Below, in pieces: positions 544 to 3,500 of a DNA stretch of 64,000 nucleotides. Within the stretch, counting starts at the first letter, position 1. Every line of letters begins with the position of its first letter. Source of the DNA: Bugula neritina. Taxonomy: Eukaryota > Animalia > Bryozoa. The translations under genes and the position numbers were made by a program. Below the pieces are notes generated by a model. It was not told where the DNA came from, did no database searches, and saw nothing but the letters and a program-made list of their open reading frames with translations. The stretch spans positions 8,898,741-8,962,740 of the forward strand of contig OZ037768.1 of assembly GCA_964035545.1 (NCBI GenBank), in the 5' to 3' direction.

Positions 544-3500
544 ATGATTTCTCTAGATAATTCTGTGATTGCTAATGGCATCAGTTTTCGTGAAATAGCA
601 CCAACACCTCAGAAGATTCCAGTTCTACATACTTCTAATATAAACAACAATGCAATCAGTCTTGGCTCCACCAAACCGCCAGACACTAGTCATGAAGAGC
701 AGAATTCAATAGTAGACGATTCTAAAACAAATCTTATAATTAACTATCTTCCGCAAACCATGTCACAAGAAGAAATAAGATCACTGTTCAGTAGTATTGG
801 AGAAGTAGAAAGTTGCAAACTTATTAGAGACAAACAAACAGGTGAAAAGTTTACCATAATCTTAAACAAATACATGTCTGCTATTTGTTCTGTACCATCA
901 GTTCCAAATCTATAAGCTGTTAACTTCTATGCTCTGGGAAATAAAACTCTCTTAAGTGGTATTTACAGCATTCAATTGAGTGTGTAGAGTTTTAGAGAGA
1001 TTATGAGTTTCATTTCTTAACCTGATTTAATGTCTGAAACCAAATTTTGGCAAGTTTAGTTTTTATACTCATACTCTTTTTGTATAGGTCAAAGTTTAGG
1101 ATATGGATTTGTAAACTATAAGCATCAAGAAGATGCTACTAAAGCTATCCAAAACCTAAACCAACTTCGACTTCAAAATAAGACAATTAAGGTAAGTACT
1201 TGATTTTAATTCATTCAAGTCAAATTCATTTGTTCTTTATTTATACATTTACATCCTTTTTATTGATGGATATGTACATCACAAATGCATCGCTCTATCT
1301 AGTTTTGTACACATGATCTATATTATATGTTCCCTAAAGAACTAATTTGTACTGCTGTTGATCTGTTAGCTTTTGAGTAAATTTTCCAGTTGTTCTCATG
1401 GGAGGAATTATTCAGACTATTTGACTAAAACTTAAGTAACTAAGTCAATAGGAAAATAATCTCAAATGCCCTAAACTAATCATGGACAGCTCAGCAGAGC
1501 GAAATTAATGCTCATTAATGCAATCAAATTGACTGTGATGAGATTAGGCAATTAGTAGCAATTTTACTCTTGAAAGCAATAAATGCCTGCCTTGAAATAT
1601 AACGTGCAATGCAGTCTGCTTCCTATATCTTAGTTTGACCTATTATAAATATAGCTGTGTTAAAAAATGTTTTTAAAGTTTCCTGGAAAAGTAGTCTCTA
1701 AAAAACAGTTCAAAAATTTTTTTTAAATAGAGTTCAACATCTTTTTTTATCATTTTTTGTTTCCGTTTTACTTATGAATCATTTATCATGTTATGTGTTT
1801 GATTTTTGCTCTTATCTGTTATATTCAACCTAACTTTTGTTTAAAAGCTGCATATTGATTGATTTACCAAGCTCTGGTTTGCAATGAGCATTATTTTATC
1901 TTGTACAACAAAGCAGAAACCATTGCATACTAGCAGATAGTTCAGGTGAAATGCCTATACCTTGAATAGAAAGAGTGTTTTGATAAATAAATAAATTCTG
2001 CTTCAGTTGTGTTTTACTATTTATGATTTAGTTATTTACTGTTTCATGTTGTTTTATAATATTTGCGATTTATCAGTTTGCTTTTGTTTGCCTAACATGT
2101 GCACAGGTATCACTGGCTAGACCTAGTAGTGAAAGCATAAAGGGGGCTAATCTTTACATTTCGGGCATTCCTAAAACAATGACACAGTTGGACTTGGAGA
2201 CTTTATTTAGTAGTGTGGGGGAAATTATTTCTTCACGAATTCTTACTGAACCAGCGACAGGTTTGTTAAAGCTAAAACTAAAGTAACTAATGGTGTGGTG
2301 CTGCCTATGCTTACATTACCAAACAGCATTTACTCACCGTCAGCATTGAACTCTAGAAAACTGGAGAGAGGGGAGCGAATTGTGTGCAATTTATTTTATG
2401 AATTTGTTTGCTTCAGTTTTCCATAATTAGCTGTGTTTAAAAATTTACCAAACCCTGGAATATAAATTAAAAGGCTGTGTGAGTAGTTGCTGTTTGGTAG
2501 TCTAAGCTAGCTGGGTGGTGTTATTTTGTTTTTTGTACTAACATTTTCATTGTCTTCTTTCTTGCTCCGTGGTGTAGGTTTCTTTTGCACGACCCAGCAG
2601 TGAAACGATTAAGGGTGCTAACTTGTACATTTGTGGATTTCCTAAAACTATGACACAGCCTGAATTAGATGAGCTTTTTCAACAATGTGGCAATATAATC
2701 ACATCCAGAATACTGTATGATAACAGTACAGGTATAAGAGTTGTAATTTCAGTTCAACGCTCCCTTTGCTGCTATTTGTCATAGTTGAATCATTATTCTG
2801 TTGCCATGACGTTATTTATTAATTATTCTTTGGTGCTGTTGAGGATCCTAACTCTGTTGGTTAATTGTTTCTTTGCTATGTTCCTTGGTACACCTCGTAA
2901 AACTTACTGTTACCATCTGCACAGTCTTTTACCTTGTATGTAGACTATGAATTTTGGCTAGTTGTACTTATTTACATGTTTATTATATATTCTAGCACAT
3001 TTTAGAATTTTCTATAAGTCATGTTAAATTATGTGCACTGTAAATCATTTTCCTGTCTAATGACTCAAGATTGTAGACTCTCTTGCATATCAAGTACTAT
3101 GCTCTTAGTAATTTAGTCGGATGTGCATGTAAATTAGATAATAATATATATTATATATGATTTGTCCACAACAGAGTTACCTGATCCCATTAAAACTTAT
3201 ATTCGCTTAGCACAAGCAGGTGCCAAATATTTAAGATCAAAATATTTTTATGATGCCAGTTGAAAACCTAGTCAGCCAATCAATTGAGAATGCTAAAATT
3301 TGATAAAACAACATAAGCCATTAGTAACCATTTTAGCAAGTTTAAAAGTGGAGATAATAAAATAGTTGCTGTTCTATATGTAATAGGGCTTCCACCTACT
3401 CAATTATAGTCACCATCAGTAACTAGTTTCTACTCTAACTATACACTCTGAATTGCATGGTTACATTCTCCCCAATTGATTTCAGTTTATTTAAATAAAA

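What the first reader, a model, noticed from the sequence alone, without database searches (positions are those of the whole stretch)
2107..2731. Tandemly duplicated, mutually exclusive RRM1-linker-RRM2 exons in an ELAV/Hu gene
Seen: two intact 154-nt exons with identical phases encode paralogous peptides. Including both or neither shifts the frame, so use must be exclusive. They differ at RRM1 beta4 (VSLAR vs VSFAR; canonical VSYAR), at RRM2 RNP2 (LYISGI vs LYICGF) and in the beta2-beta3 loop (TEPAT vs YDNST). Many synonymous differences with conserved protein suggest both are under selection. Established: RRM1, the linker and RRM2 form the ARE-binding clamp of Hu proteins, and known Hu alternative splicing is mainly at the N-terminus and hinge. 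Inference: one locus makes two ELAV proteins with different RNA-binding surfaces, which could mimic paralogue diversification. I do not know this arrangement from model-organism elav/Hu genes.
Basis: partly seen in the sequence, partly recalled or inferred. Interest (0 to 1): 0.85.

Follow-up and report, generated by a model that had tools for sequence, protein, structure and literature searches.

The report
Ancient swappable exon in neural ELAV
In this moss animal, and in molluscs and an annelid worm, the gene for the nerve-cell RNA-binding protein ELAV keeps two alternative copies of one exon inside its RNA-binding region, so one gene has probably made two versions of the protein for over 500 million years, which I found no paper describing.

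Summary
Exons A (2107-2260) and B (2578-2731) are intact, 154 nt, same phase, 34/51 aa identical. Either gives a 414-aa ELAV; both or neither gives an early stop. An independent assembly, probably Bugula neritina, holds both.

The pair is ancient. It lies in A-then-B order in two other bryozoans, oysters and the annelid Owenia. Nineteen RefSeq isoform pairs from four mollusc classes differ only inside this exon. Both bryozoan copies are under purifying selection, and B also has fewer synonymous changes.

Known RNA-contact residues are almost the same in A and B. The lasting differences are at HuR-equivalent positions 120 (Leu in every A), 111 (Ser/Cys), 131 and 141, mostly on helix 1 and loops. 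That favours tuning of partners or regulation over a new RNA target.

No paper found. The scan has noted similar exon pairs in other genes of this genome. New member of a known kind.

The parts
544..841 (+). Coding exon E1: N-terminus and first half of RRM1 (start codon as in the public gene model P0002; upstream exons not mapped)
1088..1191 (+). Coding exon E2: RRM1 RNP1 to just before beta4; donor at phase 0
2107..2260 (+). Alternative exon A: RRM1 beta4, linker, RRM2 beta1-helix1-beta2 (HuR 93-143); Ser111, Leu120 type
2309..2337 (+). 5' arm of a 29-nt inverted repeat in the A-B intron (86% complementary); not conserved in two other bryozoans
2362..2390 (+). 5' arm of a predicted helix with 2739-2773 that would loop out exon B; significant in this species only
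2479..2507 (+). 3' arm of the 29-nt inverted repeat
2536..2577 (+). Consensus branch point TACTAAC (2536-2542) and conserved pyrimidine tract and acceptor of exon B; branch point also present in L007, Watersipora and Owenia
2578..2731 (+). Alternative exon B: same region; Cys111, non-Leu120 type; reduced synonymous divergence
2739..2773 (+). 3' arm of the predicted helix across exon B
3613..3847 (+). Coding exon E4: RRM2 RNP1 to hinge
5174..5627 (+). Coding exon E5: Pro/Thr/Ala-rich hinge, RRM3 and stop

Best explanation
The gene is a bryozoan orthologue of lophotrochozoan elav1. One exon, coding the RRM1 beta4 strand, the RRM1-RRM2 linker and the first half of RRM2, was duplicated in tandem once, before bryozoans, molluscs and annelids split. 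Each mRNA keeps A or B. Exclusivity is backed by the reading frame (shown; decay of the off-frame products by NMD is inferred). It was perhaps first enforced by a donor-to-branch-point gap too short for joining A to B, which Owenia still has (40 nt). Exon B looks like the regulated exon (inferred). Both proteins keep the same core U-rich RNA clamp. They differ mainly at the start and outer face of RRM2 helix 1 (positions 120, 124, 128, 131), at the end of beta1 (Ser/Cys111) and in the beta2-beta3 loop (141). The likely effect is different protein partners, multimerisation, modification or a modest affinity change, not a new target motif (inferred). About 0.9 for a functional ancient either-or pair, about 0.65 for the whole statement.
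For: Frame and splice sites. A-then-B order in an independent assembly, L007, Watersipora, three oyster loci and Owenia. Nineteen same-length RefSeq isoform pairs in 9 mollusc genera have all 6-11 differences inside this exon. Window vs L007: A 51/51 aa with 23 synonymous codons, B 49/51 aa with 8 (Fisher p 0.002). The best tree of 14 pairs puts all A on one side and all B on the other, weakly supported; bryozoan-only duplication is rejected at p-AU 0.031 and Owenia-only at 0.0055. Leu120 is in 14/14 A and 0/14 B; Cys111 is in 11/14 B and 0/14 A. RNA-contact positions average 1.2 A/B differences against 4.1 elsewhere. Owenia Elav1, the pan-neural marker (PMC8111721), clusters with the protein of the gene that carries the pair.
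Against: No RNA reads from this species were laid. The trees rest on 51 columns. In the larger tree the B exons of Mya, Mercenaria and Ruditapes group with bivalve A, which needs partial gene conversion or re-duplication. Contact residues are conserved in all ELAVs, so their sameness does not exclude a change in RNA preference; position 141, which touches RNA in one simulation, differs in 14/14 pairs. Several lineages keep only one copy (Paralvinella, Dimorphilus, Lamellibrachia, L019), so the pair is not indispensable. No tissue data were obtained.
Confidence: 0.65

Rival explanations
1. One reading: the two exons give two RNA-binding specificities, so the isoforms regulate different mRNA sets.
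For: The exon codes the linker and half of the RRM2 sheet. Ser/Cys111 ends beta1 and differs in 11/14 pairs. Position 141 differs in 14/14, and HuR Gln141 and Asn134 bond RNA in simulations. Position 131 is Lys or Arg in 11/14 B exons.
Against: 13 of 15 crystal-contact positions are invariant between A and B, including Arg97, Tyr109 and Arg136; none differs in this species. PMC8553928 argues that ELAV paralogues differ only minimally in RNA recognition.
Confidence: 0.2
2. The two proteins are functionally near-equivalent. The pair persists because each exon is the only one spliced in some cell type, or because double skipping or inclusion with NMD sets ELAV dose.
For: Both off-frame products carry early stops. 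B has RNA-level constraint. Either copy alone suffices in some annelids.
Against: Copy-specific residues have been fixed across three phyla (Leu120 in all A, Cys111 in most B), which is more than interchangeable copies need.
Confidence: 0.12
3. One copy is silent or decaying in this species, or the duplication is an assembly artefact.
For: No direct reads here. A decayed B does exist in Paralvinella.
Against: An independent assembly has both copies. Both are 94-100% identical in protein across three bryozoans while synonymous sites have diverged. Splice signals are intact and conserved.
Confidence: 0.03

Closest known systems
ELAV/Hu family (HuD, HuC, HuR; lophotrochozoan Elav1)
   Same: Three RRMs; best PDB matches HuD 1FXL (E 2e-57), HuC and HuR; the intron phases match the conserved junctions J2, J3 and J5 of Samson 2008 (PMC2529313).
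   Different: Described ELAV splicing adds mini-exons in the RRM2 loop, hinge or N-terminus; in bee and cricket it is confined to unstructured linkers (PMC8553928). Here a whole structured exon is swapped. Crustacean and thrips isoform sets showed one version only.
Tandem-duplicated mutually exclusive exons (human catalogues PMC5740500, PMC9741552; U2AF1 exons 3/Ab PMC5224494)
   Same: Adjacent homologous exons of equal length and phase, ancient, frame-protected; about 60% of human clusters have lengths not divisible by three and 9% have a donor-branch point gap under 50 nt.
   Different: ELAV is not named in the main text of either human catalogue. This pair is so far limited to lophotrochozoans.
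Splice-isoform separation after gene duplication (Abascal et al. 2015, PMC4494069)
   Same: The second ELAV gene of this genome (contig C5) keeps a single A-like exon, 82% identical to A.
   Different: The parent gene still has both exons, so the separation is one-sided; the C5 exon has Cys111 with Leu120.
Dscam-type docking/selector pairing
   Same: A predicted helix in this species would loop out exon B.
   Different: Only two exons, and no conserved pairing in other bryozoans, oyster or Owenia.

Membership tests
ELAV/Hu family | Tandem RRM1-RRM2, hinge, C-terminal RRM3, highest similarity to Hu proteins | tested here: met
ELAV/Hu family | Conserved exon junctions (phase 1 before RNP1 of RRM1 and RRM2, phase 0 before RRM1 beta4) | tested here: met
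   phases; junction description in PMC2529313
ELAV/Hu family | Binds U/AU-rich RNA | not testable with these tools
   contact residues conserved, binding not measured
Lophotrochozoan elav1 (neural) subfamily | Orthology to named Elav1 rather than Elav2 | tested here: inconclusive
   Shares the exon pair with the Owenia gene whose protein clusters with Elav1; no named Elav2 was available for a tree
Mutually exclusive homologous exons | Adjacent homologous exons, same length and phase, each in frame | tested here: met
Mutually exclusive homologous exons | Transcripts carry exactly one of the two, in related species | tested here: met
   19 RefSeq isoform pairs, all differences inside the exon; these are annotation models, not reads that I inspected
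Mutually exclusive homologous exons | Transcripts carry exactly one of the two, in this species | not testable with these tools
Mutually exclusive homologous exons | Both copies under purifying selection | tested here: met
Steric-interference exon pairs | Upstream donor to downstream branch point under 50 nt | tested here: not met
   280 nt in the window, 236 in L007, 191 in Watersipora; met only in Owenia, 40 nt
Docking/selector (Dscam-type) clusters | Conserved or covarying complementary intron elements | tested here: not met
   stems significant only in this species

The most novel reading that the evidence does not exclude
The A/B choice is a cell-type or stage switch (for example progenitor versus neuron, or neural versus non-neural) in elav1, the standard pan-neural marker of spiralian development. 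One gene would then do by splicing part of what vertebrates do with HuR versus HuB/C/D, and the switch would be invisible to the usual in situ probes and gene-level single-cell counts.
Probability: 0.25. Interest if true: 0.8.

Novelty: new member of a known kind. Interest (0 to 1): 0.58.

Why it matters
ELAV/Hu proteins are core neural RNA regulators, and how near-identical family members differ in function is an open question. This pair is a natural two-state experiment: the same protein with 6-17 residues swapped in one exon, kept in three phyla, with natural losses of each copy. It names specific residues (111, 120, 131, 141) to test. It also means that elav1 marker and Aplysia memory studies may have pooled two isoforms. 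The mechanism class itself is well known, the isoforms already sit unremarked in RefSeq, and the scan has found many such exon pairs in this genome.

Tried and rejected
Those positions were kept out of all later searches; loci L001 and L003, which contain them, were not used.
Searches used single exons by reference or public proteins (P0002, P0007, P0237, P0261). I joined exons only inside a local script to check the frame. One search had E2 off by one base; corrected.
3. RNA-structure control of exon choice, a lead from two earlier notes. The 29-nt stem (intron z -2.8) and the helix across B (-27.5 kcal/mol, 0/40 shuffles) are real in this species. Intron folding is unremarkable in L007 (z 0.07), Watersipora (-0.63), oyster (0.57) and Owenia (0.99), and the cross-B helix is not significant there. 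Not accepted as the conserved mechanism.
4. Rbfox TGCATG: 2-3 copies in every B-E4 intron, but also common in other introns of these genes; weak. MBNL-type YGCY downstream of B p 0.02, uncorrected; weak.
5. Beta4 Leu/Phe as a specificity switch: rejected as a general feature, since it is not fixed across lineages.
6. Ten literature searches found no description of the pair; subscription journals are mostly not covered.
7. Chiton genomic locus not on record. No brachiopod, nemertean or phoronid sequence was identified.

Full report
Observation. The two exons are as described. A is 2107-2260 and B is 2578-2731; each is 154 nt, bounded by AG and GT, phase 0 to 1. They share 94/154 nt and 34/51 aa, with 21 synonymous and 17 non-synonymous codon differences; dN is about 0.25-0.34 and dS is saturated. 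With E1 544-841, E2 1088-1191, E4 3613-3847 and E5 5174-5627, either exon gives a 414-aa three-RRM protein. Both exons stop at codon 194 and neither at codon 158, 363 and 163 nt before the last junction. That such products are removed by NMD is inference from the general rule.

Source and artefact check. A public gene model (P0002, GCA_010799875.2) matches E1-E2-B, and that assembly carries A at 152/153 nt and B at 153/153 nt. From memory this assembly is Bugula neritina; the closest named relative found is the bryozoan Watersipora subatra. The best solved relatives are HuD, HuC and HuR. Use of both exons in this species is therefore not shown directly.

Selection. A second bryozoan (L007) and Watersipora (L010) have A then B. 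Against L007, A is identical in protein with 23 synonymous codon changes; B is 49/51 with 8. Across the three bryozoans the share of synonymously changed codons is 0.36-0.45 in A, 0.36-0.55 in constitutive exons and 0.16-0.25 in B. The B deficit has Fisher p 0.002 for window vs L007, 0.06 and 0.12 for the other two non-independent pairs. The 3' splice region of B is also conserved, with a perfect TACTAAC branch point 33-37 nt from the acceptor in three bryozoans and Owenia. Low synonymous change plus a conserved acceptor is the usual sign of a regulated alternative exon (own knowledge), so B is probably the regulated copy.

Depth. The same tandem order is in three oyster loci and in Owenia fusiformis, and a Mya gene model reads through A into B. 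Nineteen same-length RefSeq isoform pairs from Octopus, Haliotis, Liolophura, Crassostrea, Mercenaria, Ruditapes, Physella, Biomphalaria and Pomacea differ at 6-11 residues, all inside this exon. Such isoform models normally rest on transcript alignments (own knowledge). Named annelid Elav1 sequences fall in both types: Owenia and Phascolion are A, Malacoceros is B. In a tree of the 14 pairs plus outgroups all A lie on one side and all B on the other, with weak support (67/78 and 30/0). A bryozoan-only duplication is rejected at p-AU 0.031 and an Owenia-only one at 0.0055. With single-copy sequences added, the B exons of three heterodont bivalves group with bivalve A and octopus A is unresolved; partial gene conversion would explain this. 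The trees use 51 columns and the model without mixture, so they are supporting evidence only. One origin before the split of bryozoans, molluscs and annelids (Cambrian or earlier, own knowledge) is the simplest reading. Isoform sets of a barnacle, two prawns and a thrips show a single version.

Losses. Paralvinella keeps A and a decayed B with two stops and no acceptor. Dimorphilus has only a B-type exon, fused to the next exon. Lamellibrachia and an unnamed contig (L019) have one copy. The second ELAV gene of this genome (C5) has one A-like exon. I did not check whether these species hold further ELAV genes with the other copy.

What differs between the proteins. Numbering by HuR follows the 4ED5 alignment, which places the exon at residues 93-143. 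The model gives beta4 92-95, beta1 107-111, helix 1 119-126 and beta2 132-139. Of the 15 residues here within 4.5 A of RNA in the closed HuR crystal (PMC13635762), 13 never differ between A and B in 14 species, and none differs in this species. The positions that differ most are 120 (14/14; Leu in every A, never in B), 141 (14/14), 131 (13/14; Lys or Arg in 11 B), 128 (12), 124 (11), 111 (Ser in every A, Cys in 11 B) and 95 (10). Positions 120, 124, 128 and 131 are spaced as one helical face (inference; solvent exposure was not computed). Outgroups mostly have Ser111 with a polar or Pro residue at 120, so each copy has one derived marker. Rotifer and many flatworm-like single copies have Cys111, so the direction of that change is open. 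The RNA-facing core is kept; the lasting changes sit around it. Positions 111, 134 and 141 could still trim affinity.

How exclusivity is enforced. The frame is the one safeguard shared by all species examined. In Owenia the A-B intron is 74 nt and the branch point lies 40 nt from the A donor, under the 50-nt limit for steric interference (PMC5740500). In bryozoans this gap is 191-280 nt. In this species a 29-nt stem (intron z -2.8) could shorten it, and a second helix could loop out B. Neither is conserved in L007 or Watersipora, so both stay unproven and local.

Comparison with what is known. It is an ELAV/Hu gene, and the duplicated exon lies between junctions that are conserved from insects to vertebrates (PMC2529313). 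Described ELAV splicing uses mini-exons; in bee and cricket it is confined to unstructured linkers (PMC8553928). The Aplysia paper that I read treats ApELAV1 and ApELAV2 as family members and does not mention splicing. Searches for ELAV with exon duplication, mutually exclusive exons, molluscs, octopus or lophotrochozoans found nothing relevant; most subscription journals are outside the library. As a splicing arrangement it belongs to the known class of tandem-duplicated mutually exclusive exons. The scan has noted many other candidate pairs in this genome; I did not check them.

Verdict. A real, ancient and apparently undescribed either-or exon inside the RNA-binding region of lophotrochozoan ELAV. 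The either-or reading is strong (about 0.9). The functional meaning is inferred, with partner or regulatory tuning favoured over a new RNA specificity. New member of a known kind; interest 0.58.

Noticed in passing
L005 6600-3200, minus strand (G000 C5 near 1.15 Mb): Second ELAV gene with the same intron positions and one A-like exon carrying Cys111 with Leu120. No RRM3 match was found in about 13 kb downstream or in the genome-wide RRM3 search; the hinge runs into a Gln/Ala/Pro-rich stretch.
   Followed up: partly
L006 6064-2282, minus strand (G000 C3 near 4.19 Mb): Third, divergent ELAV-like gene with three RRMs, 43% identical to exon A; possibly the elav2 type.
   Followed up: no
L014 4477-4632: Decayed exon B in Paralvinella: two stops, acceptor lost, donor kept; a natural loss.
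   Followed up: partly
L011 1457-1879: Dimorphilus gene has only a B-type exon with no intron before the next exon, as expected from intron loss through a B-type mRNA.
   Followed up: partly
proteins P0353, P0348, P0182, P0196: Heterodont bivalve B exons share Cys100 with their A exons, and a Nucula sequence mixes Cys111 with Leu120: signs of gene conversion between the copies.
   Followed up: partly
window 2261-2269 and 2536-2543: The A donor (GTTTGTTA) is the same in three bryozoans and is complementary over 5-6 nt to the B branch-point sequence; too short to assess.
   Followed up: no
L020 2001-3155: The rotifer Brachionus ELAV gene found is intronless and has Cys111 and Arg131, as in B.
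   Followed up: partly
window 38548-44075 (+): Several ORFs with repeated, widely spaced C2H2-like zinc fingers in Gln/Pro/Met-rich sequence; one multi-exon gene likely.
   Followed up: no
window 9030-10700 (-): 556-codon low-complexity ORF, acidic then Ser/Arg-rich, part of a neighbouring gene on the opposite strand.
   Followed up: no
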